Below, in pieces: positions 1,317 through 32,070 of a stretch of 64,000 bases of DNA. The notes beneath the pieces are model-generated. The model did no database searches. It was given only the letters and a program-made list of their open reading frames with translations, and had not been told where the DNA came from. Every line of letters begins with the position of its first letter. Position 1 is the first letter of the stretch. The stretch lies in NCBI GenBank assembly GCA_038087875.1, contig CM075978.1, forward strand, positions 94,488,001 through 94,552,000, read 5' to 3'. Both the position numbers and the translations under genes were made by a program. Source of the DNA: Malacoraja senta (Eukaryota).

Positions 1317-1380
1317 TTTTAAAGAGAGAGGTAAACCATTGAGGTCATACTCAATGTGTTAAAACAATGGTGTAGAGTAT

Positions 1381-1477
1381 TGAAGAAGGATCTTGACCCG
1401 AAATGTCACCCATTCCTTCTCTCCAGAGATGATGCCGGTACCGTTGAGTTACTCCATCATTTTGTGTCTATCTTCGA
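1381..1477 (+). mobile_element. Penelope-like terminal mini-insertion (degenerate hammerhead core)
   Basis: TGAAGAAGGATCTTGACCCGAAATGTC...TTTGTGTCTATC; TSD TGTAGAGTATTGA at 1371-1383 and 1478-1490. Confidence 0.8.
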
Positions 1478-1965
1478 TGTAGAGTATTGACATGAATTGA
1501 GAGCCAGTAAGAACATTTTGAATCTGGGTGACAGGAAAACAACTGATATCGGATCAGCCATTGTATATCTCCAAAAACTTTTCATTTCTATTCATTTCAA
1601 CAAGGTATTACAAATTGCATTCCCTTCACCAGAACAAATGATCTTATCTTAATGCATGCAAAATTGATTAAAAAGAGAAGAATGTATTACTGAATTATCC
1701 TTAATGTTCCAACATCTTTCTGCACTTAACGGTGCGTCTGATATTATGCTTTGAAGCTGGTCATTAAAGCAGAACTCTCAAGGCTCATTCATAGAACAAT
1801 GTGTGGGTAGATTTTTTGTCTTCACCACCCAGGTCGTGATCTGATGGAACAGATCCTACACCCATTATAGATTAGCAGTGGGCTATGAAGATTAAAATCC
1901 ACACCGTAATTTAATTCGCTACATCACGCTCTGAACAAAAATAAACGCAACCACCACTGGCAAGG

Positions 1966-2555
1966 AATCCAGACCATCACACAAACCAACCTCCCTTCCA
2001 TTGACTCAGTTTGCACCTCACGCTGCCTCCACAAGGCCACCGGCATAATCAAGGAGGAGTCGAACTCTGGCCGCTCCCTCTCTCCCCCTCTCCCATCAGG
2101 CAAGAGGTACTGAAGTGTGAAAACTCACACCTCCAGATTCAGGGACAGTTTCTTCACAGCTGTTATCAGGCAACTGAACCATCCTACCAACAACTAGAGA
2201 GCAGTCCTGAGCATCTGAGGAGAAAAAGAGAATATTTTCAGATGGATGATCATTCATCACAACGAGGCAATGAGTTAGATAGTAGCTCGGGACTGCTCTC
2301 TTACCAACCACTGGACAGCGGTCCTGAGCCACTATCTACCTCATTGGAGACCCTCGGATTATCTTTGATCGGACTTTGCTGGACTTTATCTTGCACCAAA
2401 CATTATTCATGTTATTCCCTTTATCACTGTGGATGGCTTGAGTGTAATCATGTATTGCTGGGTGTCCGCTGACTGGTTAGCATGTGCCAAAAGCTTTTCA
2501 CTGTACCTCAGTACGTGATGATTAACTAAACTCAAACGCAAACTAAACTCAAACT
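1966..2555 (+). mobile_element. Rex-Babar LINE 3' fragment
   Basis: Degenerate QTITQTNLPSID...LPSGKRY...SRFRDSFF C-terminus; (AAACT)n-type tail. Confidence 0.8.
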
Positions 2556-2592
2556 CTTGCATAGTTTTCTTTCTTCTGGAAATGTTATGTTT

Positions 2593-2975
2593 GTACTTTA
2601 AAAAAAATTGAGGTCAGGTAAGGGGGGATGCTAGTTGAAGAGTTGGTATGTCCCATTTACGTAATGCTCATAAAAATATTTGTTTCTCTCTTTTTCCTCT
2701 TTCTCTTTCTCTTTCTTTTCTAGGGTCTATTTCTTAACTCTTTTTCTTTTGTTTTTTAATTTTGCTCTTATAGGGTCTTCGTCCTTTTTTGTTGTCACAT
2801 TTTCTACACTTTCACTTTTTCCTTCACTTTCTTCTTTCTTTCAATCTTTTCTTTTTCTAGTGTAAAAAATAAATGGGGTACATTAATTGTAAGAAGACAT
2901 AAGTGACGAGTACTAATGTATGTGGTTGTAATGTAATGTACTTCTAATAAATTTTTTTTTTAAATTAAAAAAAAA
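2593..2975 (+). mobile_element. L1-type LINE 3' UTR
   Basis: T-rich 3' UTR ending TACTTCTAATAAA plus A tail like 47321-48125; 15-bp TSD GGAAATGTTATGTTT at 2578-2592 and 2976-2990. Confidence 0.8.
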
Positions 2976-3699
2976 GGAAATGTTATGTTTAATGTATGGA
3001 TGATTTTACATGTAATTTGTTTGTATGCGTCTACATGCGTGTTATGCCACTGCACGCAAGATATTTTGTTGTGCCTGTCACACACCGCACTTGTCCATAG
3101 GGCAATAGACTCAACTTGGCTTGGTTTACGATTCAAACCAGCCATGATCTGAATGAACAATGTAAAGAAAATAAATAATTAGGGAATATAAACTGCTCCA
3201 CAAACCAGGGACAGAACTCCGTGATAAAAGTGACTGAAGCCACAGAAAGATGCATCGTACTACCTGGGCACAGAATCCTTTTCTAAAGTTAAATAATCTC
3301 ACAGGAGTCAGGCTGTGGGAATGCAATGAGAAAGGAGATCAATTAAGAGCAAACAACTAACGCTGGCAAAGGAACACCTTCCCCCCCGCTCCATGGTGCA
3401 GGGGAAGGGTAATGTGAATAGAGAAGGGATCTGATTGCATAGGCTGACACTTCACATAAAAGGAAGCATTTCGGCTAAACGATAACCTCAGACTGCATTG
3501 CGGGAGCAGAGAATAGAACAGGACCAGAGATTGTCGACAATCTCCACCCAGCTTTGCACAATTAAAGTGCGTTGACAAAATTAGTACCAAGTAGCTTCAT
3601 TTAGAATGATTCCATGCTGAATAGATTAAAATATAATTCCCTGGTGACAATAAATTGGAAGGATTCCAAATGGAAGCAATGTTATCAAACATATTACTT

Positions 3700-3905
3700 A
3701 GAAAGACCCTCAAACTATCCTTGATTGGACTTTGCTGGCTTTAAACTAAACATTATTCCCTTATCATGTATCTTCTATGCACAGTAAATGGCTCGATTGT
3801 AATCATGGATTGTCTTTCTGCTGACTGGATAGCACGCAACAAAAGCTTTTCACCATTCCTCGGTACACGTGACAATAATAAACTAAACTAAACTAAACTG
3901 AACTA
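3700..3905 (+). mobile_element. Rex-Babar 3' UTR fragment
   Basis: Similar to 2345-2555 and 31575-31780; GTGACAATAATAAACTAAAC tail. Confidence 0.7.
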
Positions 3906-4004
3906 GTGAGGAAGCATTTACACAGGAATGTAAGAACAGGAAGGGCTGTTTAGCTCAAATACCTGTTTGGCTGTTCATTCTGATCATGGCTTGTTTGAAT
4001 CTTA

Positions 4005-4650
4005 AACCAAGCCAAATCGAGTCTATTGTCTTATAGACTAGTACCGTGAGCTACAGGTACAATGACAAATCTTACTTGCTGCAGCATTACAAGCACATAG
4101 ACATATACAAACACACAGAAACAAATTATATGTAAAATCATCCAGAAATTTAACACAACAATTCCAAAAGAACGAAGACTATGCAAAAAAGCAAAACGTC
4201 AGTGGCAAAACATAATTAACACAATAAAGCACGCCATGTTGATTGATGGTCATGGCGTCATGTTGAGCACAGACATTGTGGGCCGAAGGGCCTGTTTTTA
4301 CGCTGTACTGTTCTCTGTTCTATGTGAGTGCAAGAGGTGGACGGTGGTGTTCCGTTGACGAGGTAGGTATAGGGTTGAGCAGGTTAATTTAGAAACTTGC
4401 TAGTTGCAGAGAAGTACGTAACTGATCCTGAATCTGATGGTAGGGCACTGCAGCTTCTGTACCTCCTGCCCAATTTAGCAGTGAGAAGAGGGCATGACCC
4501 GGATGGTGGGGATCCTAGATAGAGGCCACCTTGAGATAGTGCCTCACATAGATGCTTTCCATGGAGAGGAGGGCTGTGCCCGTGATAGACCGTGCTGAGT
4601 CCACACTCTCTGTAGCCTCTTGTGTTGGAATTGCCATACCAGGCCATAGA
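4005..4650 (-). mobile_element. degraded Rex-Babar 3' fragment with an embedded CR1-type tail piece
   Basis: Minus-strand translation includes LGRRYRS; tail piece GTGGGCCGAAGGGCCTGTT near 4278-4322. Confidence 0.55.
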
Positions 4651-4702
4651 TATTTATATACGTATTTTCCTTATATCCCGCAACACCTTTGGTTAAGTAT
4701 AT

Positions 4703-4882
4703 CCAAGTCAGTGGATATTTTTAAGGCAGAGATAGACAAGTTCTTGATTAGAACAGGTGTCAAGGGTTATGGGGAGAAGGCAGGAAAATGGGATTCGGTG
4801 GCAGAGATCAGTCAAGATTGAATGGCGGAGTGGACTCGATGGGCCGGCTGGCCTAATTCTACTCCTATAACTTGTGAACTTG
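4703..4882 (+). mobile_element. CR1/HER1 3' end
   Basis: KSVDIFKAEIDKFLI..GVKGYGEKAGKW followed by the conserved tail. Confidence 0.85.
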
Positions 4883-5341
4883 TTAACAAATGGCCATACG
4901 TCAATGCATCTCAGGTTTAAATTTAACTATTAAGTTTGCAGCATTTGACATTTGTAGCAACTTCATATCTCTACCATCTTATAAATTTATTCATGTTTCC
5001 TAACTTCACTCTGATAAACCAGGCTCATATTTTTAGGCTGAGCTCCCCATCCCTGGACTCGCAGAATGTTACTCGCCGCCACTGAAGCACCCCCTAACGT
5101 GCTGAAAATTTCAGTCAAAGCACTCTTAACTTTCCAAATTCCAAGATATACAACCTTGCTTTGTGCAATTGCTCCTTGCAATTTAATCCTTGGAATCCAG
5201 GTTTCATTAAGGTAACTCTATACTGGACTCTCTCTAAGGCCAATTCATCTTCCTCAGCGAAAGTTCAAATAACTGCTCGCAGTACTCTCAGGATGTTTGC
5301 ATCAGGGCTTGGTTTAACTTCAGCATAATGTCTATCTCACA

Positions 5342-5490
5342 AGTTCAGAAGTTCATAAGCTCTAGGAGCAGAATCAGGCCATTCGACTCATCAAGTCTAC
5401 TCCACCATTCAATCATGGCTGATCTATCTTTCCCTCTCAACCCCATTCTCCTGCCTTCTCCCCATAAATCCTGACACCCGTACTAATCAA
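5342..5490 (-). mobile_element. CR1/HER1 3' end
   Basis: Reverse complement of the GGGAGAAGGCAGGAGAATGGGG...TTGAATGG tail. Confidence 0.8.
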
Positions 5491-6054
5491 ACTCACTCAT
5501 CTACAGACACTTACTTACTCCTTACTCCTCATCTCCAGTCATTTCGAATATAAAGACCTAGTTTAATTTTTTATTAATTTCTAATTTTATTCTAATGATT
5601 TCTGTGCAAAGATCCACAAATTCCTTGCATCTCCACCCTTTCTAGCATTCACCATTTGCAGCATATTATGAACAGAGAAACAAGCCAGAAGTAAGCAATA
5701 TGCCCTTGGAGCCTGATGCACCAAAATCATCAAGACTAATCATCCATGTCAAGACCATATTCCCACTCTTTCCCTTTGATGTCTTTTTTGTCCAGAAATA
5801 TATCTATATTTTGAAGTAGGTATGTTCAGCAAATTGTTTTCAACCACCCTCTACAGCATAGAACTCAAAGACTATGCACTGACTGAGTGGAGAAATGCTT
5901 CCTAATCTCAGTCCTAAAGATCCCAGCCCATGTCCTGAGACTGTTTCCTCTTGGTGCAGAAGCACCACCCAGCATAAACATCTTCACTGCATTGGGCTGT
6001 CAAACCCTCTCACAATTTAGAACGTTTTAATGAGATCGCCTCTCATTCTCCCGA

Positions 6055-6552
6055 ACAAGAGACAAGACTGTTTCATTGTCATATGTCCCAAAATGGAACA
6101 ATTAAACTCTTACTTCCAGCCAGACAACAGATATGTAAACATAGTCTTCAGTAAAACTCATAGTAAACAACAACAACAAAATCAATGCAGGAATGAACTG
6201 CAGATGTTGGTTTAAACCGAAGATAGACACAAAAAGCTGGAGTAACTCAGCAGGTCAGGCAGAAATCTCTGGAGAAAAGGAATAGGTGACACTTTGGGCC
6301 GAGACCCTTCAGTATCTATGTAAAAAAAAACCCAGACAAATAAATAGACAATAACAGTGCAAAAATAATGTCCCAAAGTCTATATAGTTTGGAGCCTATT
6401 TTGAGGTTGCGTTCTTTACTAGCTTGATGGTCGTTGGGCAGAAACTGCTCCTGAACCTGGATCTTATAGTTTTCAGGCTCCTATACCTTCTTCTCGATGG
6501 CAGGAGTGAAATGAAAGCGTGGCCAGGGTGGTGTGGGTCTCTGATGATGCTG
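6055..6552 (-). mobile_element. Rex-Babar 3' fragment interrupted by a Penelope terminal fragment (~6186-6312)
   Basis: Similar to 60340-60690 in reverse; internal GAACTGCAGATG...GAGTAACTCAG block. Confidence 0.7.
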
Positions 6553-6818
6553 ATACATTTTAATCGGACCGCCTCTCATTCGCCCAATACAGGGCTAGAG
6601 AACCCCATGCCCCTTTGAACAATGGTCCTGGATTTCCAGGATCAGTCTGGTGATCCTATATTGCATTGCCTCCATTTACAAGTAGACCACTGTACTTCAG
6701 TACACACAGTACTCCAGGCCTTGGATAATCATCGTTGGACCCTCATGCTCCTGCACTCAGATCTCTTGTACTGGAGGCCTACAAAAAAAAAGCCTTAATT
6801 ACTTGCATCACCAACATG

Positions 6819-7042
6819 GGAGACACAAGGAACTGCAGATTCTGGTTTTACAAACTAAAACAAAGTGCTGGAGTAACTCCACAAGTCAGGCAGCATCTCT
6901 GGAGGACATGGATAGGTGATGTTTTGGGCCGGGACTTTTCATTCCGAAGAAGGGTAACAACCTAAAACGTCACCTATCCATGTTCTCCAGAGATGGTGCA
7001 TGACCCGCTGAGTTGCTCCACCACTTTGTGTCTTTCTTTGTT
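6819..7042. mobile_element. Penelope-like palindromic terminal insertion
   Basis: Inverted arms around CCGAAGAAGGG...AAACGTCA; approximate TSD TCACC(A/T)ACATG. Confidence 0.75.
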
Positions 7043-7390
7043 TCACCTACATGTTTGCTTTCAGTGATTGATCCACAAGGATACCAAGTTCCTTTGTGCT
7101 TCAACATTACGTTATCTAACACCATTTAAATAATAATTTTCCTGTGTTTCCTTCCAAAGCGGTTACGTTTTTATACATCATGCAGCATCTGCTATGCATT
7201 TGCCCACTCGTTCATCCGATATTTGCAATAGTTTTGCCTATTCCCTCACTCTAGTGTTATCTCTTTTTAATTTAATGCTACCGTGTACAAAGAACAAAGG
7301 ATACCTAGTTCTCTATTGTAAATAAAGTGAATAGTTGCAGCCTACTATAAGCTGCAGGACATCATTCATAGTCTTCCACTATACAGATTA

Positions 7391-7710
7391 TTAGTTTAGT
7401 TTAGTTATGCAGCACGGAAACAGGCCCTTCAGTCCACCTGGTCCGCGCCGACCAGCGATCCCCACACACTAACACTGTCCTACTCCCACCAGGGACAATT
7501 TTTACATTTACCAAGCCAATTAACCTACAAAGTTGTACGTCTTTGGAGTGCGGGAGGAAACCACACATACCGGAGATAATCCACGCAGGTCACGGGGAGA
7601 ACGTACAAACTCCGTACAGACAGCACCCGTAGTCAGGATTGAACCCGTGTCTCCGGAGCTGCATTCGCTGTAAGGCAGCAACTCTACTGCTGCGCCACCG
7701 TGACTGCCCT
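7391..7710 (-). mobile_element. HE1-type tRNA-derived V-SINE
   Basis: A box TGGCGCAGCAG and B box GGTTCAATCC on minus strand, V-domain GGTTTCCTCCC.CACTCCAAAGAC, (CTAAA)n tail. Confidence 0.9.
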
Positions 7711-7937
7711 CAACATTAGTTCAACATTTAACCAGAAAGTAACCCTATTTTCTCCATATGTTTATGTTATTAATGAACAGAAGTGCAATTTCACTACTAA
7801 AAATTAATTCGACTTGAAAAGAAATGAAAATCATAAATGTCCTTACATGACATTAGGGCATTAGACAGGAAACCTCAATAACAAATCCTCTGCCATGTAG
7901 GCCCCTCATACCAACTCCAGGTATGTTCAGAGACAGC

Positions 7938-8227
7938 AGTGGCACATTGGCGCAGCAGTAGATTTGCTTCCTTACAGCGCCAGAGACCCGGGTTTGATCC
8001 TGACTACGGGTGCTGTCTGTACGGAGTTTGCACATTCTCCCTGTGACCTGCGTGAGTTTTCTCCGGTTTCCTCACACACTCCAAAGACGTCCAGGTTTGT
8101 AGATTAATTGGCTTCTGTAAATTGTCAACTCGTGTGTAGGATAGTGTTAGTGTGTGGGAATCGCTGGTCAGCGTGGACTCGGTGGGCCGAAGGGGCTGTT
8201 TCCGCGCTGTATGTCTAAAATCTAAAA
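7938..8227 (+). mobile_element. HE1-type V-SINE
   Basis: TGGCGCAGCAG, GGTTTGATCC, CACTCCAAAGAC, GGGCCGAAGGGGCTGTTTCC tail. Confidence 0.9.
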
Positions 8228-8707
8228 GTGCAAGCAAATGGGGTTCGTTGGAGATGGGGAAAATGGGCAGCATGGATGTGATGGGCCAAAGGGCCTGTTT
8301 ATGTGCTGCTTTATGGCCTAATTGTCCTAACATTGGATAACATTGGATAAATGTTGAATCTAATACCTGAAAAGGTGATAGAAGCCTGTTCCATGAATAA
8401 TTTGAAAAGAGAGTTGTAAAGGCACTTATGTTTGAGGAGTTTGAAGAAGGGTATCGACCCGAAATGTTGGGGATCGAACCCGGGTCTCCTGCGCTGCAAG
8501 CGCTGTAAGGCAGCAACTCTACCGCTGCACCACCTTGCCACACAGACTTGGCAGACGTGAATATGCCAAAGCCACTTATTTGAAAGCTCTGCTCTATGTC
8601 CGGTCTAATCGATAATTATGGCGGGGAATGCCATTTTCTTGTGAGAGTGGATGTGGTCCTCACACAAAGGCGGAGGATGTGCAGTGGTGTGTCTGTCCGC
8701 TAAATAG

Positions 8708-9470
8708 AGTCTTAGAATCATAGAAGTGATACAGAGTGGAAACAGGCCCTTCAGCCCAACTTGTCCACACCGGTCAACATGTGCCACTTACACAAGTCCC
8801 ACCTGCCCAGGTTTGGCCCATATTCCTACAAACCCATTCTATCCATGTTGTACCTGTCTAACTTTTTCTTAAATGTTGGGATAGTCCCTGCCTCAACTAC
8901 CTCCTTTGGCAGCTTGTTCCCTGTGTGAAAAAGATTACCCCTCAGATCCCTATTAAATCTTTTCCCCTTCACCTTAAAATAGTCCTCTGGTCCTCAATTC
9001 ACCCACTCTGGGCAAGAGACTGTGCATCTACCCTTCATCCTCCTACGCTCCAAGGAATAGAGTCCCAGCCTACTCAACCTCTCTCTATAGATCAGACCCT
9101 CTAGTCCTAGCAACATCCTCATAAATCTCTGTACCTCTCTAGCTTGACAATATCTTTCCTACATCATGGTGCCCAGAACCGAACACAATATTCTAAATGC
9201 AGCCTTACCAACATCTTATACAACTGCAACATAACCACCCAACTTCTATCTGAGTCTGAAGAAGGGTCCCGACCCGAAACATCACCATTCCTTCTCTCCA
9301 GAGATGCTTTTTGTGTCTATCTCCCAACCTCTATACTCAATACTCTGACTGATGAAGGCCAATGTGCCAAAAGTATTTTTGACCTGCGACTACACCTTCA
9401 AGGAACCATGCACCTGCACTCTTAGATCCCTCTGCTCTACAACACTCCCCAGACCCCTACCTTTCACTGT
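8708..9470 (-). mobile_element. CR1/HER1 3' fragment interrupted by a Penelope mini-insertion (~9250-9319)
   Basis: CR1 tail at 8708-8830 and degraded ORF2 C-terminus; insertion flanked by imperfect ~14-bp duplication C(A/T)CCCAAC(T/C)TCTAT. Confidence 0.75.
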
Positions 9471-10752: not shown

Positions 10753-13029
10753 TTGGAGGAGCAGCACCTCATATTTCCTAACATGGACCTCCTGTTAGAA
10801 AATGAGACAGGGCAGGTGGCGGAGGTATGCGTCGGGGAGCACTTCGGGTCCAGTGATCACAATACCATTAGTTTCAATATAATTATGGAGAGGGTCAGAA
10901 CTGGACCTAGGGTTGAGATTTTTGTTTGGAGAAAGGCTAACTTTGAGGAGATGCGAAAGGATTTAAAAGGAGTGAATTGGGACATGTTGTTTTATGGGAA
11001 AGATGTAGAAGAAAAATGGAGGACATTTAAGGGTGAAATTTTAAGAGTACAGAATCTTTATGTCCCAGTTCGGTTGAAAGGAAATAGTAAAAAATGGAAA
11101 GAGCCATGGTTTTCAAGGGAAATTGGACACTTGGTTCGGAAAAAGAGAGAGATCTACAATAATTATAGGCAGCATGGAGTAAATGAGGTGCTTGAGGAGT
11201 ATAAAGAATGTAAAAAGAATATTAAGAAAGAAATTAGAAAAGCTAAAAGAAGGTATGAGGTTGCTTTGGCAAGTAAGGTGAAAGTAAATCCAAAGGGTTT
11301 CTACAGCTATATTAATAGCAAAAGGATAACAAGGAATAAAATCGGTCCATTAGAGAGTCAGAGTGGACAGCTATCTGCAGAGCCAAAAGAGATGGGGGAG
11401 ATATTGAACAATTTCTTTTCTTCGGTATTCACGAAGGAGAAGGATATGGAATTATGTGAGGTAAGGGAAACGAGCAGAGTAGCAATGGAAACTGTGAGAT
11501 TCAAAGAAGAGGAGGTGCGGACACTTTTGAAAAATATGAAAACGGATAAGTCTCCAGTTCCTGACAGGATATTCCCTAGGACATTGAGGGAAGTTAGTGT
11601 AGAAATAGCAGGGGCTATGACAGAAATATTTCAAATGTCATTAGAAACGGGAATAGTGCCGGAGGATTGGCGTACTGCGCATGTTGTTCCGTTGTTTAAA
11701 AAGGGTTCGAAGAGTAAACCTAGCAATTATAGATCTGTTAGTTTGACGTCAGTGGTGGGCAAATTAATGGAAAGGATACTTAAAGATAATATATATAAGC
11801 ATCTGGATAAGCAGGGTCTGATTAGGAACAGTCAACATGGATTTGTGCCTGGAAGGTCATGCTTGACTAATCTTCTTGAATTTTTCGAAGAGGTTACTAG
11901 GGAAATTGATGAGGGTAAAGCAGTGGATGTTGTCTATATGGACTTCAGTAAGGCCTTTGACAAGGTTCCTCATGGAAGGTTGGTTAAGAAGATTCAACTG
12001 TTGGGTATTAATGGTGGAGTAGCAAGATGGATTCAACAGTGGCTGAATGGGAGATGCCAGAGAGTAATGGTGGATGGCTGTTTGTCAGGTTGGAGGCCGG
12101 TGACTAGTGGGGTGCCTCAGGGGTCTGTGTTGGGTCCACTGTTGTTTGTCATGTACATCAATGATCTGGATGAAGGTGTGGAAAATTGGATTAGTAAGTA
12201 TGCAGATGATACTAAGATAGGTGGTGTTGTGGATAATGAAGTAGATTTTCAAAGTCTACAGAGAGATTTAGGCCATTTGGAAGAGTGGGCTGAAAGATGG
12301 CAGATGGAGTTTAATGCTGACAAATGTGAGGTGCTACATCTCGGCAGGACAAATCAAAATAGGACGTACACGGTAAATGGTAGCGAATTGAGGAATGCAG
12401 TTGAACAGAGGGATCTAGGAATAACTGTGCATAGTTCCCTGAAGGTGGAATCTCATGTAGATAGGGTGGTAAAGAAAGCTTTTGGTGTGCTGGCCTTTAT
12501 AAATCAGAGCATTGAATATAGAAGTTGGGATGTAATGTTAAAATTGTACAAGGCATTGGTGAGGCCAATTCTGGAGTATGGAGTACAATTTTGGTCGCCT
12601 AATTATGGGAAGGATGTCAACAAAATAGAGAGAGTACAGAGGAGATTTACTAGAATGTTGCCTGGGTTTCAGCAACTAAGTTACAGAGAAAGGTTGAACA
12701 AGTTAGGTCTTTATTCTTTGGAGCGCAGAATGTTAAGAGGGGACTTGATAGAGGTCTTTAAAATTATGAGTGGGTTAGACAGAGTGGACGTGGATAAGCT
12801 TTTCCCATTGAGAGTAGGGAAGATTCAAACAAGGGGACATGACTTGAGAATTAAGGGACAGAAGTTTAGGGGGAACTTCTTTACTCAGAGAGTGGTAGCT
12901 GTGTGGAATGAGCTTCCAGTGGAAGTGGTGGAGGCAGGTTCGATGTTATCCTTTAAAAATAGATTGGATGGGTATATGGACAGGAAAGGAATGGAGGGTT
13001 ATGGTCTGAGTGCAGGTAGATGGGACTAG
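10753..13029 (+). CDS. CR1 ORF2 fragment: end of APE endonuclease (SDH) plus complete reverse transcriptase; no native start
   Basis: 758 open codons with GSSDHN, NYRSVSLTS, QHGF, DFSKAFD, GVPQGSVLGPLLF, YADD, ERVQRRFTRM, TRGH motifs. Confidence 0.9.
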   Translation: MEEQHLIFPNMDLLLENETGQVAEVCVGEHFGSSDHNTISFNIIMERVRTGPRVEIFVWRKANFEEMRKDLKGVNWDMLFYGKDVEEKWRTFKGEILRVQNLYVPVRLKGNSKKWKEPWFSREIGHLVRKKREIYNNYRQHGVNEVLEEYKECKKNIKKEIRKAKRRYEVALASKVKVNPKGFYSYINSKRITRNKIGPLESQSGQLSAEPKEMGEILNNFFSSVFTKEKDMELCEVRETSRVAMETVRFKEEEVRTLLKNMKTDKSPVPDRIFPRTLREVSVEIAGAMTEIFQMSLETGIVPEDWRTAHVVPLFKKGSKSKPSNYRSVSLTSVVGKLMERILKDNIYKHLDKQGLIRNSQHGFVPGRSCLTNLLEFFEEVTREIDEGKAVDVVYMDFSKAFDKVPHGRLVKKIQLLGINGGVARWIQQWLNGRCQRVMVDGCLSGWRPVTSGVPQGSVLGPLLFVMYINDLDEGVENWISKYADDTKIGGVVDNEVDFQSLQRDLGHLEEWAERWQMEFNADKCEVLHLGRTNQNRTYTVNGSELRNAVEQRDLGITVHSSLKVESHVDRVVKKAFGVLAFINQSIEYRSWDVMLKLYKALVRPILEYGVQFWSPNYGKDVNKIERVQRRFTRMLPGFQQLSYRERLNKLGLYSLERRMLRGDLIEVFKIMSGLDRVDVDKLFPLRVGKIQTRGHDLRIKGQKFRGNFFTQRVVAVWNELPVEVVEAGSMLSFKNRLDGYMDRKGMEGYGLSAGRWD

Positions 13030-13154
13030 GGAGAAGTATTTATTTTTAATTTAAAAAAAAAAAATTTAAAAATAAAAAAAAAATTTAAAAAATGTTCGGC
13101 ACGGACTTGAAGGGCCGAGATGGCCTGTTTCTGTGCTGTTATGGTTATATGGTT
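10778..13154 (+). mobile_element. 5'-truncated CR1-clade (HER1-like) LINE, young
   Basis: TSD ATATTTC at 10771-10777 and 13155-13161; tail GGCCTGTTTCTGTGCTGT plus TATGGTTA repeats. Confidence 0.92.
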
Positions 13155-14226
13155 ATATTTCGCTTGGGCAGTTTACAACCCAGCGATATGAAAATTGCAT
13201 TTTCTAACTTCAAGTAACCCTATCTCTCCGACCCTCCCCCACCCAAGTTGGCATACTAGCTTCATAGTCAGCTTGTTGCGTCTCATTGTCTGTAACTCAT
13301 TCTCACCCAGGCCTCAGCTAAAAATGGCCTTTCTCCTTTATCATCGTTGCTATTTTGCATATCTTGCATTCATTTCTCTCTCTATATATCATTTCTCTCT
13401 CTCATTCTATATATCTCTCTATCACCTTCTATATCTCTCATTTCCCTTTCTCCTGACTCTCAGTCTGAAGAAGGGTCTCGATCCGAAACATCACCTATTC
13501 CTTTTCTCCAGATGCTGTCTGACCAGCTGAGTTACTCCAGCTTTTTGTGTCAATCTTCATATTAATAAATATATATTCATATTAATCTATCTTCAATATT
13601 AATATATTGTTTGGTGCATGCATGCATCATTTACATATTTTCTGCATCTGCTGATAAAAGTCCAAGGGAAAATGGCATGTCCGAATGTTACTTGATCATT
13701 GCGATGCTTCACTTCCTTGTTAACAGAGCAGAGCTTAATGTTTGTTAAACAAATATGCACACATTATATAGAGGGAGCTGTGTTGCATGACTGGAAGTAA
13801 AGAATTATCAGCTGAAATCAAAGTGCGTTGCTAAATCAATATAGTGTCATCTGTAGCTTCCATGAGTTGCTATGGGACAATCTTTTCTAGCACATTTAGA
13901 CTGGCCAAAAGAGAGCAGAAACCACTCCTCATATGCAGGCCCTCTCACAGATGAACTGAGGCCCAGGCCAATTTCAATTTTCGTAGCCCCCAAACCAAAA
14001 TCAAGCAGAGACCTCTCAATTTTAGAGACCCCCAAATCAAGATCCCTTTGAAGCAGACAGGCATGAGGCCCATGCCAAATGGCACTCATTGCCCTCCCCT
14101 CTGATAGGGCCTGCTCATACGTGTATGATACACACAAGTTTAAAAACTATTCTATTGCATATAGCCATGTGGTTCATGAATGTTTCTGTGAGGTGCTCAA
14201 CAACATTTACCACATAAATATAATAC

Positions 14227-20444: not shown

Positions 20445-21266
20445 TAAACTCTCTGTTTTTAAAGGTAAATGCCTTGAAGTTTATGGACCAGGTAGAATTT
20501 AATACAGCACAAATAATGTAGAAAGCAAGAAATCACTTACTACCAGGTAATATACAAAAAAATGTTCTTTGTCAGGGAGGGTGGTTATAATTTGAGAGGA
20601 AAGTTTAATTTTGTGTTCGTACAACTATGAAGAGTAGGGGGTTTCAATCTGAGGGGTGAAATTGTGGAATGATCTGGATGTGGAACTCAAGCAAAGCATA
20701 GGCATTACTAAGAAGAAGTGCAGACAAATATTTTCAAGAGGCATAAGAATGAGGAAGGGTTGTGATGATGGTTAAGTTTTAGTTTATTGCCACGGTGTGA
20801 TATTCGCATTGTACATAGAATTTGGATAATTGTTTATAAACTGTATATATGTCTGTTTGCGTGCGTGCATATGCATGTATATATGTCTGTATGTATGTAG
20901 TTTATGTANNNNNNNNNNNNNNNNNNNNNNNNNNNNNNNNNNNNNNNNNNNNNNNNNNNNNNNNNNNNNNNNNNNNNNNNNNNNNNNNNNNNNNNNNNNN
21001 NNNNNNNNNNNNNNNNNNNNNNNNNNNNNNNNNNNNNNNNNNNNGATGAGTAGCAGAAAAGGGGTAGGAATAAATAAGTGTACACTTCCTCCTACTCTTT
21101 TTCGAACATGTAAGATTTAATTTGTGATGTTTATGAGAAGTTATTTAATGAGTTATGTATAGGTTTATCGTTCATTTCATTTTATTGTTATTTTGCTTTG
21201 TTTTTAACTTATTTTGTTTTACCTGTTCGAAATATAATATATACTACTACTACTACTACTACTACT
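20445..21266 (+). mobile_element. L2/Crack-type LINE 3' fragment spanning a gap
   Basis: NSLFLK..ALKFMD.VEF.TAQIM*KARN.LLPGNIQK..F.REGGYNLRGKFNF; 3' stem-loop GGGGTAGGA..AATAAG..TCCTACTC; (TAC)n tail. Confidence 0.7.
20909..21044. other. assembly gap
   Basis: N run. Confidence 1.
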
Positions 21267-23137: not shown

Positions 23138-23165
23138 CCCTTGGATGTACAGTGTTGCTTTCGTT

Positions 23166-24214: not shown

Positions 24215-25053
24215 CTTTACTTTAGACCTTAGGGACAAAACGTGGAAACAAGCCCTTCGACCCACCGAATCGGCTCCGTCCAGTGATCACCCCGTACACT
24301 ATCCTACACACAAGGGACAACTTACAGTTTTACAGATACCAATTAAAGGTTTCAAAGGTCTTTTATTGTCACATGTACCAATTAAGGTACAGTGATATGC
24401 GAATTACCATACTGCCATACGAAAGAAAAAAGCAACATGACACACAACTACATAAAAGTTAAGATAAACATCCACTACAGTGGATTCCCCACATTCCCCA
24501 CTGTGATGGAAGGCAAAAAAGTCCAAACTTCTTCCTCTTTATTCTCCCGTGGTCGGGCAGTTGAACCATCCATCTGGGCGATCAAAGCTCCCGCAGCTGG
24601 CGGTCGAAGCTCCCGTGTCGGGGCGATCGATGCTCCCGTGTCGGGGCGATCGAAGCTCCCGTGTCGGAGCGATCGAAGGTCCCACGTCAGGGCGATCAAA
24701 ACTCCCGCGTTGGGGCGGTCGAAGCTCCTGCGGCTTGGAGTTCCCGAAGTCGGTCTCTAACTAGAGACCACGAGCACCGTGATGTTACTGTAAGTCTGCA
24801 AGCACCCATGGGTGGAACTCTGAGGTCGATCCCTGGCAAAGGGATCGCAGGCTCTGTGATGGTAAGTCCACAGGTACCATAGTATAACCCGCACATATAT
24901 CAAGTGTGGGTGGAAACCGGAGCACCCGGTGAAAACCCACGCGGTCACATGGAGAACGTACAAACTCTGTACAGACAGCACCTGTAGTCAGGATCTAACC
25001 CAGTTCTCTGGTGCTGTAAAGCAGCAACTCTACCGCTGCACCACCTTGCCACC
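24215..25053 (-). mobile_element. HE1-type V-SINE interrupted by a hairpin SINE-like element (24346-24892)
   Basis: SINE tail at 24215-24345, head at 24900-25053. Confidence 0.8.
24346..24892 (-). mobile_element. hairpin SINE-like element with a ~22-bp GC-rich minisatellite (24575-24730)
   Basis: GTGACAATAAAAGACCTTTG tail, hairpin box, GGGCGATCGAAGCTCCCGTGTC-like repeats. Confidence 0.65.
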
Positions 25054-25737
25054 CTACTGAAACAAAGAATTTTGACTCTCAACCTCTCCCATACAATAAT
25101 CCACATTTTGAGTTTTTTTCATGTTTTTCTTTCTTGCCTAGTTACTTGTCTGACTACAAGGAACACTTGGGTAGGAAGGAACTGCAGATGCTTGTTTAAA
25201 TCGAAGATAGACACAAAATGCTGGAGTAACTCAGCAGGGACAGGCAGCATCTCTGGAGAGAAGAAATGAATAACACATAATCAAAATTTAAGATTTTGCA
25301 AATCATTCAACTGATAAAATTATCACTTGCTGAATTTCAGTTCACCTTCTTCTTCTTCCTCTTCCATGTCCATCTTCCATGTTTCAAATGTTGACATCGC
25401 TGTCATCGTCCGTCCTGAAAAGGGCGCAAGCTTCTGGCGACAATCAGTGGGATCCATCACTTGTTGCAATAGATGATGGTGGTAGCAGAATTTGCTCGGG
25501 ATACTTCCAGTTTCCAGCCCCGCGACATGGACACTTTTGCTAAGGTGCCTCAATTCACCTGAAATACTGAAAGCATTTCCCACCAGTCTCCCCACCAGTG
25601 TCATTGTTGCAACTTGCAGGTGCAGTTACAAAGCAAAAGACTGCTCCCTTTGAGAACAGGAAATTAAAACAGAAAATTATGGAAATAATCTTTAAGTCTG
25701 CAGAGGGAGATAGAGAATCAATGCGTAGGAAGGAGTT

Positions 25738-25936
25738 ATGAGTTAGATATAGCTCTTAGGGCTAACAGAATGAGTTAGATATAACTCTTAGGGTTAACGG
25801 AAACAAGGGATGTGGGGAGAAAGCAGGAACGGGGTACCGATCTTGAATGATCAGCCATGATCATATTGAATGGCAGTGCTGGCTCGAAAGGCAGAATGGC
25901 CTACTCCTGCACCTATTTTCTATATTTCTATGTTTC
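25738..25936 (+). mobile_element. CR1 3' end with a 32-bp internal tandem duplication
   Basis: GAGTTAGATATA.CTCTTAGGG occurs twice; tail TTTCTATGTTTCT. Confidence 0.8.
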
Positions 25937-27045
25937 TGTGAAGGAACTGCAGATGCTGGTTTAAACTGGAGAGAAACATAAAAAGCTGGAGTAACGGGTC
26001 AGACAGCATCTCTGGAGAAAGGAATAGGTGATGATTTGATCAAGACCCTTCTTCAGACTGAGAGTCAGGGGAAAGGGAAACAAGATCGGTAGTAAAGAAA
26101 GCAAACTCAATGCTCGCATTTATTTCAAGAGGGCTTGTATACAAAAACAGTCATGTAATGTTGAGGCCCTATAAGGCACTGGTCAGGCCGCATTTGGAAT
26201 ATTGTGAGCAATTTTGGGCACCATATCTGAGGAAGGTGTCGATGTGGAGACAGTGTAGGAATAGAGGTCATAGCCTCATAATTAAAGGACATTCTGTAAG
26301 GAAGGAGATGAGAGAAATATCTTTTGTCAGAGGGTGGTGATTCTATGGAATTCTGCCACAGAAGGCTGTGGAGGCCAAGTCCGTGGATATTTTAAAGTCA
26401 GAGATAGATAGATTCTTGTGTTAAAGAAGGAACTGCAGATGCTGGAAAATCGAAGGTACACAAAAATGCTGGAGAAACTCAGCGGGTGCTGCTGCACCCG
26501 CTGAGTTTCTCCAGCATTTTTGTGTACCATAGATAGATTCTTGATTAGTACACGTGCCAGGGGGTATGGGGAGAAGGCAGGAGAATGGGGTTAGGAGGGA
26601 GAGATGGATCAGCCATGACTGAATGGCGGAGTAGACTTGATGGGCCGAATAGCCTAATTCTACTATTTTTCCTTATGACCTTAAGAGATATGAAAAGGTA
26701 CAAAGAAACAAATGAATGAAAGGTATGCAAAAGGACAAATCATAGCCAGCAAGGGTGAACAAGGAAAGGTGGAGCCCACAATGGTCCATTGTTGGCTGTC
26801 GAGCAGGTGACAATCAGTAATACTAACAATGAAACTAAGCAGGACGACAGTGAAACTAGTACGACGACTAGGGTCCGGGAGGGACAGGGAAAGCGAGGAT
26901 GCAAGGGTTCCTGGAAGTTAGAGAAATCAATATTCATACCGCTAGGCTCTAAGCTGCCCAAACAACATATGAGATGCTGATCCTCCAATTTGCATTTGGC
27001 CTCAGTCTGAGGAGGCCAAGGACAGAAATGTCAGTGTGGGAATGG
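25937..27045 (-). mobile_element. Penelope 3' end interrupted by CR1 (+, ~26087-26683), itself interrupted by a Penelope hairpin insertion (26419-26528)
   Basis: EDQHLICCLGSLEPSGMNIDFSNF on minus; CR1 LAFISRG..LVRPHLEYCEQFWAPY; inner TSD ATAGATAGATTCTTG. Confidence 0.8.
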
Positions 27046-27240
27046 TATCCTCTGCCAAGTGACTCGTAGCCTTGCACCTCAAAGTCTTTCCACGATCTCC
27101 AAAGAGTGTGATGGAATATTTGTCACTAGCCTGGATGACTGCAGCTCCAACCTCAAGAAGCTCAACGCCATCTATTTGCAATCCATTAATCACTCTGAAC
27201 ATTAATTCTATTCAATGTACTGTGAGACATCTACAAAATG

Positions 27241-27560
27241 TAGTTTAGTTTAGTTAGAGCTACAGCGAGGAAACAGGCCCTTCGGCCCACCGAGTCCGCA
27301 CCGACCAGCGATCGCCACACAGTAACGCTATCCTAAACACAGTAGGAACAATTTACACTTTTTCCAAGCCAATCAACGTACAACCTGTGCGTCTTTGGAG
27401 TGTGGGAGGAAACCGATGATCACAGAGAAAACCCACACGGTCAAGTGTAGAATGTACAAAGTCCGTACAGACAGAACCTGTAGTCGGGATCGAACCCGGG
27501 TCTCTGGCGCTGCAAGAGCTGTAGGGTAGCAACTTGACCGTTACACCATCTTGCCGCCCC
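27241..27560 (-). mobile_element. HE1-type V-SINE
   Basis: Full-length match. Confidence 0.9.
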
Positions 27561-27782
27561 TGCAATGCCCTGCAATTTCTCACCCAAAGCACCTGCTGAG
27601 GCTAATGACCTCTCTCCCATCTGCAGGTTCCATGGGACTGAGATAAACATCTAGTCGGCTGGATGTGAACTTCTGCCCATATGTTGTACAGCCTGGATTG
27701 GAATTATAATTTTTGAAGGCACTTGTGGAGAAACTGGCATTCACTACCCAGACTGAAAAATCCAGGTTACATGACAATTTAT

Positions 27783-28103
27783 GGGTGGCATAATGGCACA
27801 GTGGCAGAGTTGCTGCCTTACAGTGTTTGCAGCGCCGGAGACCCAGGTTCGATCCTGACTACGGGTGCTAATGTTTGTACGTTCTCCCCGTGACTGCTTG
27901 GGTTTACTCCGAGATCTTTGGTTTCCTCCCACACTCCAAAGGCGTACAGATTTGTAGGTTAATTGACTTCGGTAAAAAAATCATAAATTGTCCCTAGTGT
28001 GTAGGATTGTGCTAGTGTACGAGTTGATCGCTGGTCGGCGTGGACACGGTAGGCCCTAGGGCCTGTTTCCACACTATATCTCTAAAGCCTAAAGTAAAGT
28101 TAA
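27783..28103 (+). mobile_element. HE1-type V-SINE
   Basis: Full-length match. Confidence 0.9.
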
Positions 28104-28708
28104 ATTCCAGGTGAAGACCCACATGGCCTGCAGATCCAAAGGGTAATTTTATTGATCATTTCTTTCCAAAAGGCCTTCCCCGACTATACGAAAATCGACA
28201 TGAAAGCAAGCAGGTGCTCAGGGCTTGTTCGAGTAATGTTTCAAATCATGGAATAAGTCAACAGGATAAGGATTAAAGATTCCAAACACTGGAAAAGACT
28301 GAAAAAACTGCAGCTGTGTGGCACTGATTTTCAATCTGCTAAAACAACATTGGCTTTGTTGAATCGCTAAGCCAACAGTGTTCAGAACAAGCAGCACCGG
28401 TAAACTGAGCAAAGCAGTCCTGGCCTTTACTGTGGAAACGAGGAAGTTTATCGACAAGGTTAGTCTGATAAAACAACAAACCCACTGACCTGCAATAGAT
28501 ACCAGAGATTAAACCACCCATGGGAATTAGACATTCTGTAACTGTTAACATACTCCTGATGAAAAGAAAGATGTTTCAGATGCATCAACCTGCAACATAT
28601 CAGCACTCACCAGACCGTTAGCAATTTCTACACCCGGTACTGCAATGAAATTCGATGCAAAAGCTAATTTATACTTGATGTTGAGAAAACTCAGTGGATA
28701 ATTTTTGA

Positions 28709-29027
28709 TTAGTTTAGTTTAGAGATTAGTTTAGTTTAGAGTTTAGAGGGGAAACAGGCCCTTCGGCCCACCATGTCCACACCGACCAGCGATCCCCGCA
28801 AACTAACACTACACACACTAGGGACAATTTACATTTATACCAAGCCCATTAACCTGCAAACCTGTACGTCTTTGGAGTGTGGGAGGAAACCAAAGATCTC
28901 GGAGAAAACCCACGCGGTCACGGGGAGAACGTACAAACTCCGCACAGACAGCGACCCGTAGTCGGGATCGAACTCGCGACCCTGGCTGTAAGGCAGTAAC
29001 TCTACTGCTGCGCCACTGTGCCGCCAC
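28709..29027 (-). mobile_element. HE1-type V-SINE
   Basis: Full-length match. Confidence 0.9.
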
Positions 29028-29814
29028 TTGATAATATGGAGCTTCTCTGTCTAAAACATTGTGTGCATTAAATGATTTAATGATACTTTCTTGTCACATG
29101 GACAGTGAAGTGAAATGCTTTGTTTTACATATCGCCTGGTAAAATCAGGTAGCAGACCTCACCTAGGCAGTATACAAGTGCCGCCACGTTTTGGTGCCGA
29201 CATTGTTACGCAGGTTCACTGAACAGTCCGGTATACTGCCTGCCGCCATACGTGGCAACAGGCTTTCCCCCCCTACCAACCACATCCTCCCCCCCTTCCC
29301 GCCACGGGTTCCGTTTTGTTCCTACCATTGACCCTTACCTTGTGTTGTCCAGACTGCCACTATTATAATAACTACTGGCTACTATTTTGCCAGCCTAATT
29401 TTATATATGCACAAAGTGGTTCAAATCATCTGAAGAAGGGTCCCAACCCGAAACGTCAGCTATCCATGTCTTTCCAGAGATGCTGCCTGATCCATTGGGT
29501 TACTCCAGCAATTCATCGGATTGTATGCAAAAAACAAAGAATTTCACTGTGACAATAAAGTATAATTGAATCATTGATTTGAATTAAATCATTGAATTAT
29601 TGTGTACTTTTGTGTAAACCAACATCTGCAGTACCTTATCCAAATAGCATCCAGTGGCATGCATCTGAAATATATTTTGTACCTGATACACCATCTTGGA
29701 ATAATCAATAGATGTAATTTTAATGTGTTCACCTCCTTTCCAACAGGTATTGAATTGATTGAAATGAATTGAATTGCACATGTGACAAGTCACAGTGAAA
29801 TTGTGTGATAATTG

Positions 29815-30057
29815 TGTCACAAAGAGAGTTGTGAGTCTGTGGAATTCTTCGCCTCAGAGGGCGGTGGAGGCCGGTTCTCTAGATACTTTCAAGAGAGAGC
29901 TAGATAGGGCTCTTAAAGATAGTGGAGTCAGGGGATATGGGGAGAAGGCAGGAACGGGGTACTGATTGGGGATGATCAGCCATGATCACATTGAATGGCA
30001 GTGCTGGCTCAAAGGGCTGAATGGCCTACTCCTGCACCTATTGTCTATTGTCTATTG
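29815..30057 (+). mobile_element. CR1 3' end nested in a minus-strand SINE-like element (~29745-30420)
   Basis: RVVSLWNS..RAVEAG..FKRELDRAL; (CTATTGT)n tail. Confidence 0.8.
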
Positions 30058-30860
30058 AAATTCTTTCCTTGCATTCCTTGCCAAGGTATGCAAATAGTCA
30101 CCCGTAAAGGGCCCTTACAAATTTACAAATTTACCACCCCCCTCCCTAACGGCTAGTCCCCCCCATGCCGGGTCCTCCATTGTTTCTTCCCCGGCAGCGG
30201 CATGCTCACTTCCACATGTCCTTCCTCATACGTCGGTCGGCGCCATCATCGACCGCCGCAACGACCTCTCAACTAAAGCAGCCGGGTCATCTCCGAACGC
30301 CTCCATGGCACCGACCCAGGCCCCAGCCGCGGGCTCCGTTGACCCAGGAGCCGTTGGCCATGGGCCCCATCCACCTCCGACCCGCGGTGCTCCACCGCTA
30401 GGCACCACCGCTGGTAGCTGCTGCAAAGATGCAAGCGCTGTCCCTTGTCCATTCTGTAGCCTTCTCTGCATAACCCCTGACACCGGTACTAATCAAGAAT
30501 CTGCCAATCTGCGCCTTACAAATAGCCAATGACTTGGCCTCCACAGCAGTCTGTGGCAATGAATTCTACAGATTCACCACCCTCTGACTAAAGAAATTCC
30601 TCCTCATTACTTAGCCACATTCACTCCAGGTGGTCAAAGAACAGCCTCATCAATCTCTCCTTGTAACTCAAACCATTCAGACAGTAACATCCTTTTAAAT
30701 AATTTTTGCTCACTTTCCAGTTTATTGACTTTCCCACTGCAGGGTGACTAGATCTATAGAAAGTATAGTATCATCCAAATACTTCAAAACAGCAACAGCA
30801 TCCACCTATATCACTGCCTCAGACAGAGTATTCTCGATTCCAAACAAACCTATCATCCTA

Positions 30861-31278
30861 TGTGTAGGAAGGAACTGCAGATACTGGTTTAAATCAAAGA
30901 TGGACACAAAATGCTGGAATAACTTAGCGGAACAGGCAGCATCTCTGGAGAGAAGTCAGAGGGTGGTGAATCTGTGGAATTCTTTGCCAGAGAAGACTGT
31001 GGAGGCAAAGTCATTGCATATTTTTAAGGCAGAGATGGATAGTACAGGTGTCAGAGGTTATCGGGAGAAGGCAGGGGAATGGGGTCCGGAGGCAGAGATA
31101 GATCAGCCATGATTGAATGACAGAGTAGACTTGATGGGCCGAATGGCCTAATACTATCCTATCACTTCCCTTATGACTTAATTGGTGTCGTTTCGGGTCT
31201 CAACCCGAAATATCACCCATTCCTTCTCTCCAGATGCTGCCTGTCCCTCTGTTACTCCAGCATGTTGTGTCTAACTTC
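30861..31278. mobile_element. Penelope palindromic insertion interrupted by a CR1 3' end (30955-31180)
   Basis: Inverted pLTR arms; TSD TCATCCTA. Confidence 0.75.
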
Positions 31279-31317
31279 TCATCCTAATTCAGTAACCAAT
31301 GTAAAAACATTTACATT

Positions 31318-31780
31318 GCGGACACGGCCCAGATCATCACACAAACCAACCTCCCTTCCATTAACTCCATCTTCTTTTAACGCTGCCTCAGCAAGGTCAC
31401 CAGAATAATCAAGGACGTCTCACCCCGGTCACTCACTCTTCTCCCCTCTGCCTTCAGCCAAGAGTTATGGAATTGTGAAAAAGCTTATTCAGGGACAGTT
31501 TCTTCCCAGTTGTTATCAGACAACTGTGCCATCCTATCAACAACTGGAGAGCGGTCCTGAGCTACCATCTACCTCACTGGAGACACTCAAACTATCTTTA
31601 ATCGGACTTTATTGAACTTTATCGTGCACTAAACATTATTCCCTTTATCATGTATCTATACACTGTGGATGGCTCGATTGTAATCATGTATAACCTTAGT
31701 CTTTTCACTGACTGGTTAGCATACAACAAGAGCTTTTCACTGTACCTCAGTGCATGTGACAATAAACTAAACCAAACTAA
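31318..31780 (+). mobile_element. Rex-Babar 3' fragment
   Basis: Homologous to 1966-2555; GTGACAATAAACTAAAC tail. Confidence 0.8.
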
Positions 31781-31783
31781 AGC

Positions 31784-32070
31784 AGAAGATAGACACAAAT
31801 TGCTGGAGTAACTCAGTGGGACAGGCAGCATCTCTGGAGAGAAGGAATGGGTGACGTTTCGGGTCAACCAAAACATCACCCATTCTTTCTCTCCAGAGAT
31901 GCTGCCTGTCCCACTGAGTTACTCCAGCATTTTGTGTCTATCTTCAATGTAGAGTATAGACGTATTGAGAGCCAGTAAGGACATTTTGATTCTGGGTGAT
32001 AGCAACAACTGATATCGGATCAGCCATTGTATATTCGGTTTAAACCAGTATCTGCAGCTCATTTCTACAA
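31784..32070. mobile_element. Penelope palindromic fragment carrying an 87-bp copy of 1478-1568
   Basis: Direct sequence comparison (see findings). Confidence 0.8.

What the first reader, a model, noticed from the sequence alone, without database searches (positions are those of the whole stretch)
1371..32034. Unique flank of one Penelope copy pasted inside another Penelope copy 30 kb away
Seen: at 1381-1477 a Penelope fragment sits between TSDs (TGTAGAGTATTGA), so 1478-1568 is native host flank. The same flank (TGTAGAGTAT..GAGAGCCAGTAA..CAACTGATATCGGATCAGCCATTGTATAT) recurs at 31948-32034. There it follows the same Penelope junction (TGTGTCTATCTTC), and the Penelope consensus then resumes (TCGGTTTAAACCAG.ATCTGCAG). 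The return point TATATTC resembles the exit point TATCTTC. Inference: a break in the 32-kb copy was repaired by invading the paralogous repeat, copying past its end, and snapping back by microhomology. Ordinary 3' transduction would not resume mid-element. The donor's TSD gives the direction of copying.
Basis: partly seen in the sequence, partly recalled or inferred. Interest (0 to 1): 0.75.

Follow-up and report, generated by a model that had tools for sequence, protein, structure and literature searches.

The report
Neighbour repeat's flank copied into repeat
An 89-bp piece of ordinary, roughly two-copy DNA that lies beside one copy of a very abundant short retroelement was copied, junction included, into another copy of that element about 30 kb away; this is an old, tidy scar of template-copying, most likely DNA repair, and has no visible function.

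Summary
At 1371-1568 a 94-bp retroelement fragment sits between perfect 13-bp target-site duplications, so 1478-1568 is host DNA. The junction and the next 87-91 bp recur at 31946-32034 (89% identical). There they lie inside another copy, between its hairpin arm and its ~33-bp tail.

Contig word depth in four public runs gives about 1-3 copies of the segment, against about 10^7 summed depth for the repeat arms. Independent contigs carry the acceptor junctions. One 853-nt contig from a differently coded organism, about 5% diverged, spans arm, insert, tail and unique flank. The event is therefore real and old.

The donor's duplication sets the direction as 1.5 kb to 32 kb. The mechanism is inferred. 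I favour DNA-templated ectopic repair between neighbouring repeat copies (0.55), because donor and acceptor lie 30 kb apart in cis and in the same orientation. Reverse-transcriptase template switching (0.28) is not excluded.

The return microhomology is weak: 1 exact base, 4 of 5 imperfect. The Penelope label rests on structure and a motif only. An assembly gap lies between the two loci and was not spanned. This is a known kind of event and of modest interest.

The parts
1371..1383 (+). Left target-site duplication of the donor insertion (TGTAGAGTATTGA)
   Evidence: 13 of 13 identical to 1478-1490.
1384..1477 (+). Donor: single-arm, short-form copy of the abundant Penelope-like tail repeat. 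It starts in the hammerhead-like core and ends ...TATCTTC plus GA.
1478..1568 (+). Native host flank of the donor. It begins with the right target-site duplication (1478-1490). This is the stretch that was copied.
   Evidence: The flanks 1250-1383 and 1569-1800 have no other match in the window.
20909..21044 (.). Assembly gap between donor and acceptor. It is not part of either and was left as it is.
   Evidence: Continuity not tested.
31759..31770 (+). Probable left target-site duplication of the acceptor unit (ACAATAAACTAA), inside the (AAACT)n-like tail of a SINE-like repeat.
   Evidence: 12 of 12 with 32067-32078. About 1% of random flank pairs score as high. It is 15 bp from the element on the left, so it is probable, not certain.
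31785..31862 (-). Inverted arm of the acceptor hairpin. Its outer end is the canonical short 3' end, with no tail.
31868..31945 (+). Direct arm of the acceptor. It ends ...CATTTTGTGTCTATCTTC at the base of the hairpin.
   Evidence: 95% complementary arms, dG -87.7 kcal/mol, z -21.6.
31946..32034 (+). Templated insertion: AA plus 87 bp copied from 1476-1568.
   Evidence: Low copy and supported by contigs.
32035..32069 (+). Resumption of the element: TC (a repeat of the arm's last two bases), then the ~33-bp tail GGTTTAAACCAG...CTACA. Its last 3 nt overlap the right target-site duplication.
32067..32078 (+). Probable right target-site duplication of the acceptor unit.
   Evidence: Word depth falls to single-copy level from about 32096.

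Best explanation
The acceptor was first an ordinary insertion of the repeat: inverted arm, direct arm and contiguous ~33-bp tail, with target-site duplications outside. Later the top strand was interrupted at or near the arm/tail boundary, which is also the base of a 161-bp near-perfect palindrome.

The 3' end ...TATCTTC paired with the homologous arm of a tail-less copy 30 kb away on the same chromosome and in the same orientation. DNA synthesis ran off the end of that copy through GA and 87-91 nt of its unique flank. The new strand then let go and rejoined the acceptor at TCGGTTT, using minimal or imperfect microhomology (TATAT against TATCT).

This is synthesis-dependent strand annealing, or a replicative template switch, with capture of flanking sequence.

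Shown: the two structures, their shared junction, the direction, the low copy number, and the age.

Inferred: that the template was DNA, that there was a break, and where it was.
For: - Direction. A perfect 13-bp duplication brackets the donor fragment, so the flank is native there. Both donor duplication copies carry T where the acceptor has A, so that acceptor state is derived.
- Copied junction. The same GA/AA dinucleotide lies between arm and flank at both sites.
- Not a family feature. Word depth in bin 31972-32002 is 47.1, 8.18, 6.7 and 122.5, against 31.8, 3.7, 6.9 and 43.3 in the unique flank. The arms sum to 10^6-10^7.
- Homology to prime on. The arms are 90% identical, and the last 18 nt before the junction are identical.
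- The tail is contiguous with the arm in all 11 long-form copies in the window, with no junction heterogeneity. The acceptor was therefore most simply a normal long-form copy. The probable duplication lies outside the tail.
- Proximity. The donor is 30 kb away in cis and in the same orientation. About 35 arms lie in this window, and an earlier unchecked scan note (s1-213383) puts the family at about half a million copies. DNA-templated ectopic repair favours nearby templates (established knowledge).
- The insert starts at the base of a very stable hairpin, a plausible break or stall site.
Against: - No empty acceptor, meaning arm-tail continuity at this locus, was seen. All three coded organisms examined carry the insert.
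- The return microhomology is only 1 exact nt.
- Arm-arm and flank-flank divergence are similar (10% and 7-11%), so descent of the whole acceptor arm from the donor cannot be excluded.
- The match between insert start and palindrome base is partly by construction, since both reflect the canonical short 3' end of the element.
- The in-cis distance depends on a scaffold join across an unread gap at 20909-21044.
- This genome's repeat family is reported elsewhere in the scan to capture host sequence by reverse transcription (unchecked notes).
Confidence: 0.55

Rival explanations
1. RNA-templated origin. A transcript reading through the donor copy into its flank served as template for a reverse transcriptase. 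Either this happened during the original insertion at 32 kb, when the enzyme copied the tail of an element RNA and then switched to the read-through RNA, giving a chimeric retrocopy. Or it happened later, as an RNA-templated patch at a nick.
For: - The architecture is equally well produced this way.
- Penelope-like elements are known for complex tandem/inverted insertions, for tails, and for retrotransposing host sequences in trans (PMC8557442).
- Unchecked scan notes report host-gene captures at this family's palindromes.
- Hairpin-arm divergence (5%) and donor/acceptor divergence (7% plus indels) are compatible with one event.
Against: - A donor 30 kb away in cis is very improbable for a diffusible RNA.
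- The acceptor arm shares no private variant with the donor arm, and five to six unrelated copies are closer to it.
- Both acceptor arms carry CA where the donor still has CG at 31913. This is weak evidence, because it is a CpG site.
- The inverted arm ends at the canonical element end, as if copied from ordinary element RNA.
- There is no poly(A) or polyadenylation signal in the tract.
- Transcription of the donor on the + strand was not tested.
Confidence: 0.28
2. Both places descend from a third composite copy, or the 87-bp piece is itself a small mobile element or subfamily module.
For: One run (X1) shows about 2.8 times single-copy depth and a third short contig over the segment.
Against: - Depth is 1-3 times single copy in all four runs, and the assembly's own organism shows exactly two contigs.
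- The window has no further copy.
- The donor duplication includes the first 13 bp of the segment, which a mobile module would not explain.
Confidence: 0.07
3. Reverse direction: the arm plus 87 bp was copied from 32 kb into 1.4 kb.
For: None specific. The shared tract alone is symmetric.
Against: - It needs a chance 13 of 13 match between the upstream host DNA and the start of the incoming segment, about 10^-8 per position.
- The flank continues into unique DNA at 1569 onward with no second junction feature.
Confidence: 0.04
4. Assembly artefact, with a repeat mis-join at the acceptor.
For: Penelope-like inverted structures are known to trouble assemblies (PMC8557442).
Against: - Contigs built independently from other runs carry 31924-32033 and 32005-32500 with no differences.
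- One 853-nt contig of another organism spans 31924-32500.
- The left arm-to-insert junction is covered only from 31924, because everything to its left is high-copy.
Confidence: 0.02

Closest known systems
Templated insertions or 'filler DNA' from ectopic repair: synthesis-dependent strand annealing with template switching, or microhomology-mediated break-induced replication (e.g. PMC8421209, PMC11724301, PMC7407515, listed; their abstracts only were read)
   Same: A short stretch copied from elsewhere is inserted at a repair junction. Entry uses homology between dispersed repeats. The return uses little or imperfect microhomology. The template is nearby and in cis.
   Different: This is a fixed germline event conserved across related organisms, not an experimental or tumour event. 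Its direction can be read from the donor's target-site duplication. No break was observed.
3' transduction by retrotransposons (LINE-1 type read-through)
   Same: Host DNA immediately downstream of a source element is carried along with the element's end.
   Different: The element resumes after the host piece. There is no poly(A). The target-site duplication lies outside the resumed tail. The acceptor arm does not look derived from the donor arm.
Chimeric retrocopies made by reverse-transcriptase template switching, and Penelope-like element insertions with tandem/inverted copies and a 30-40 bp tail (PMC8557442)
   Same: The acceptor has the inverted arm and a tail at one end only, as described for these elements. 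The insert sits at the body/tail boundary.
   Different: Known chimeras join unrelated RNAs and do not depend on where the donor lies. Here the donor is a neighbouring genomic copy, and the insert restores an otherwise normal element.

Membership tests
Templated insertion by ectopic homology-primed copying | Donor locus independently shown to be the original site of the copied segment | tested here: met
   A perfect 13-bp duplication brackets the repeat fragment, and the flank is continuous with unique DNA.
Templated insertion by ectopic homology-primed copying | Insert shares the donor's repeat/flank junction to the base | tested here: met
   ...TATCTTC GA/AA TGTAGAG... at both sites.
Templated insertion by ectopic homology-primed copying | Copied segment is low-copy, not part of the repeat family | tested here: met
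   Word depth is 1-2.8 times the unique flank in four runs, against 10^6-10^7 for the arms. The window holds two copies.
Templated insertion by ectopic homology-primed copying | Microhomology at the return junction | tested here: inconclusive
   One exact nt, 4 of 5 imperfect (TATAT against TATCT), and TC repeated.
Templated insertion by ectopic homology-primed copying | A pre-event acceptor (arm and tail contiguous) exists as an allele or orthologue | tested here: inconclusive
   Organisms F, G and A all carry the insert. The joints skipping 31942-32035 come from other genomic copies: sides of 23-29 nt and depth far above single copy.
Retrotransposon 3' transduction | Transduced piece ends the insertion and is followed directly by the target-site duplication, usually after poly(A) | tested here: not met
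   The element tail resumes at 32035. The probable duplication is at 32067-32078. There is no poly(A).
Retrotransposon 3' transduction | New copy's element part descends from the source copy | tested here: inconclusive
   The donor arm ranks 7th of 27. The only shared minority states are two subfamily-level variants, each in 33% of other copies; no private state is shared.
Penelope-like element (repeat family label) | ORF with telomerase-like reverse transcriptase and GIY-YIG endonuclease next to the terminal repeats | tested here: not met
   The only reverse-transcriptase ORF in the window (10753-13029) has relatives carrying AP-endonuclease domains, so it is LINE-like. The family's autonomous partner was not looked for outside the window.
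Penelope-like element (repeat family label) | Minimal hammerhead core in the terminal repeat (CUGANGA, helix II, GAAA, cleavage triplet, no helix III; PMC4209133) | tested here: met
   Nine matches to CTGAAGA-N10-16-GAAAYRTYA against 0.01 expected. Rfam hammerhead models give no hit. Rfam models that expect helix III may explain the miss, but this was not checked.
Penelope-like element (repeat family label) | 5'-truncated, inverted or tandem insertions with a 30-40 bp tail at one end (PMC8557442) | tested here: met
   Many hairpin pairs. A ~34-bp tail is present on about half of the 3' ends and on one side only of the acceptor hairpin.

The most novel reading that the evidence does not exclude
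The patch was made from RNA, not DNA. A nascent or read-through transcript of the upstream copy, still held near the locus because both sites lie in one transcription unit, paired with the downstream copy. A reverse transcriptase, or a repair polymerase with that activity, then copied it at a nick at the palindrome base. This would be a natural germline example of repeat-guided, transcript-templated repair in a vertebrate. It would explain both the in-cis proximity and the retroelement context.
Probability: 0.12. Interest if true: 0.6.

Novelty: new member of a known kind. Interest (0 to 1): 0.3.

Why it matters
This is a clean natural record of how dispersed repeats let repair or copying machinery move small pieces of unique DNA. 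The direction, the junctions and a minimum age can all be read from the sequence.

In a genome with perhaps half a million copies of one short hairpin-forming repeat, such events could be a steady source of small duplications. A genome-wide census of donor distances could separate DNA-templated from RNA-templated copying.

By itself this is one non-coding scar with no sign of function.

Tried and rejected
- Rfam on 31400-32400 and 13380-13620. No hammerhead. Only sub-threshold microRNA-precursor and cis-element hits, driven by the hairpin shape and taken as chance.
- A Penelope ORF in the window. The only reverse-transcriptase ORF is LINE-like.
- Whether the acceptor arm descends from the donor arm. 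No signal either way beyond subfamily variants.
- Segmental duplication. Rejected: homology is limited to the arm plus 91 bp, and neither 1250-1383 nor 1569-1800 has a partner near 32 kb.
- Subfamily module or small mobile element. Rejected on depth.
- Reading the joints 31933-31942 to 32034/35 as empty alleles. Rejected: short sides and multi-copy depth show they are other long-form copies.
- Continuity across the gap 20909-21044. The flanks share no repeat that would bridge it, and no reads call was left. The gap's letters were neither sought nor filled.
- The search of earlier findings by sequence was blank.
Full report
**What is there**

At the first place, TGTAGAGTATTGA occurs at 1371-1383 and again at 1478-1490, 13 of 13 identical. 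It brackets a 94-bp fragment of the window's commonest repeat.

From 1478 the sequence runs into DNA with no other match in the window, apart from one 91-column match at 31948-32034. That match is 89% identical, with 6 substitutions and two 2-bp indels.

The two nucleotides between the repeat's canonical end (...CATTTTGTGTCTATCTTC) and the flank are shared as well. They are GA at 1476-77 and AA at 31946-47, a CpG-type change. The junction itself was therefore copied, not only the flank.

Similarity ends exactly after ...CCATTGTATAT, at 1568 and 32034. Neither the upstream side (1250-1383) nor the downstream side (1569-1800) of the first place has a partner near 32 kb. This is not a segmental duplication.

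**The repeat family**

About 35 arms of the repeat lie in the 64 kb.

- 5' part. Nine copies carry CTGAAGA, a short stem and GAAAC-GTC, against 0.01 expected by chance. This fits the helix-III-less minimal hammerhead described for Penelope-like elements (PMC4209133). Rfam's hammerhead models do not detect it.
- 3' end. Of 22 ends found, about half stop at ...TATCTTC. The other half continue without any junction irregularity into a ~34-bp tail, GGTTTAAACCAGCATCTGCAGTTCCTTCCTACAC.
- Arrangement. Many copies are back-to-back hairpins. This matches the 5'-truncated, inverted insertions with a 30-40 bp tail at one end that are described for Penelope-like elements (PMC8557442).
- Label. The window holds no Penelope ORF, and its one reverse-transcriptase ORF is LINE-like. 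The label therefore rests on structure and motif. Earlier notes of this scan reached the same label, and I treat them as leads only.

**The acceptor**

- Arms. 31785-31862 and 31868-31945 are 95% complementary. As single-stranded DNA they fold at -87.7 kcal/mol, z = -21.6, with the base of the hairpin at 31785 and 31945.
- Inverted arm. It ends at the canonical short end and has no tail.
- Direct arm. It is followed by AA, the 87-bp copy, TC, and then the tail (32037 to about 32066-69).
- Target-site duplication. An exact 12-bp ACAATAAACTAA lies at 31759-31770 and 32067-32078, inside the AAACT-rich tail of a SINE-like repeat. About 1% of random flank pairs score as well.
- Reading. If this is the target-site duplication, hairpin and tail belong to one insertion unit and the 87 bp lies inside it. 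That excludes a second element landing next to a stray tail, and it excludes ordinary 3' transduction.

I laid Logan contigs of four public runs on 31600-32500 at 85% or higher likeness.

| Run | Coded organism | Word depth, bin 31972-32002 (inside the segment) | Word depth, unique right flank |
|---|---|---|---|
| X16 | F | 47.1 | 31.8 |
| X17 | F | 8.18 | 3.7 |
| X18 | G | 6.7 | 6.9 |
| X1 | A | 122.5 | 43.3 |

That is 1 to 2.8 times single copy. The arms sum to 10^6-10^7.

- X16 has no differences from the window, so it is probably the assembly's own species. Exactly two contigs cover the segment. One is identical to the acceptor (31924-32033). The other carries C at 32000, the donor's state.
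- The acceptor's right half (32005-32500) is identical in X16 and X17.
- In X1, one 853-nt contig spans 31924-32500, with 31 substitutions and 9 gap positions. It runs through arm end, insert, tail and unique flank.
- A second X1 contig matches only 31924-32034 and carries the donor-type 2-bp insertions, as a donor orthologue would.
- X18 carries the acceptor at about 4% divergence.

The segment is therefore not a subfamily feature, and the acceptor is not an assembly artefact. Both the donor insertion and the copying event predate the split of these organisms.

The many joints that skip 31942 to 32035 have 23-29-nt sides and multi-copy depth. They come from other long-form copies, not from empty alleles.

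**Direction**

The first 13 bp of the shared segment are the donor's own target-site duplication. The segment was therefore host DNA at 1.4 kb before the repeat arrived there. The reverse direction would need a chance 13-bp match. Both donor duplication copies have T where the acceptor has A, which marks that acceptor state as derived.

**Mechanism (inferred)**

Three routes give the same product.

- (a) Break repair or a stalled-fork template switch. The end ...TATCTTC primes on the homologous arm of the neighbouring tail-less copy and copies off its end. It then rejoins at TCGGTTT.
- (b) Reverse-transcriptase switching during the original insertion. The enzyme moves from the element's tail to a read-through transcript of the donor.
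- (c) A later RNA-templated patch.

The arms do not decide between them. The donor arm ranks 7th of 27 in identity to the acceptor arm. The two share only two subfamily-level minority states. The donor's private states are absent from the acceptor. Divergences of 5-10% on 70-90 bp are too few to order the events.

What does discriminate is position. Donor and acceptor are 30 kb apart, on one scaffold and in the same orientation. An unchecked earlier scan note (s1-213383) puts the family at about half a million copies.

A diffusible RNA donor would lie this close about 2 times in 10^5. DNA-templated ectopic repair favours nearby templates in cis (established knowledge).

On this basis I put (a) at 0.55 and (b) plus (c) at about 0.28.

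**Caveats**

- The linkage crosses an unread gap at 20909-21044 that I could not span.
- The return microhomology is only one exact base.
- The insert starts at the palindrome base partly because both positions reflect the element's canonical end.
- No pre-event acceptor was seen.

**Verdict**

The segment is essentially two-copy and the event is old. This is a well-preserved example of a known class, templated insertion through repeat homology, with no sign of function.

Noticed in passing
window 10753-13029 (+), with an A-rich tract at 13040-13095: A 758-aa open reading frame with a reverse-transcriptase domain (RVT_1, E 3e-35). Its nearest atlas clusters carry AP-endonuclease domains, so it is a LINE-type element and not the partner of the hairpin repeat.
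   Followed up: partly
window 13200-13600: A longer copy of the repeat's 3' region reaches more than 250 bp upstream of the hammerhead-like core. After its end ...CAATCTTC, a second CTATCTTC follows 28 bp later in AT-rich DNA. This may be a small duplication at the same element end.
   Followed up: no
window 31500-31781; also 2299-2537, 3704-3897 and 48711-48959 (-): A SINE-like repeat ending ...GTGACAATAAACTAAACT(n), with very high copy number (summed word depth 10^5-10^6). The acceptor unit is inserted in its tail.
   Followed up: partly
window 47137-47189 and 48329-48381: Two identical hits of the repeat arm lie 1192 bp apart. This is consistent with the large duplication that another note of this scan (s1-187661) describes around an L1 at 46934-48512.
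   Followed up: no
window 59746-59943: A second assembly gap (198 N). It is outside the finding.
   Followed up: no
window 31786-31945: The hairpin draws sub-threshold Rfam hits to several microRNA-precursor families and a viral cis-element (best 49.6 bits against a gathering score of 100). I read these as shape-driven chance, though hairpins like this can feed small-RNA pathways.
   Followed up: no
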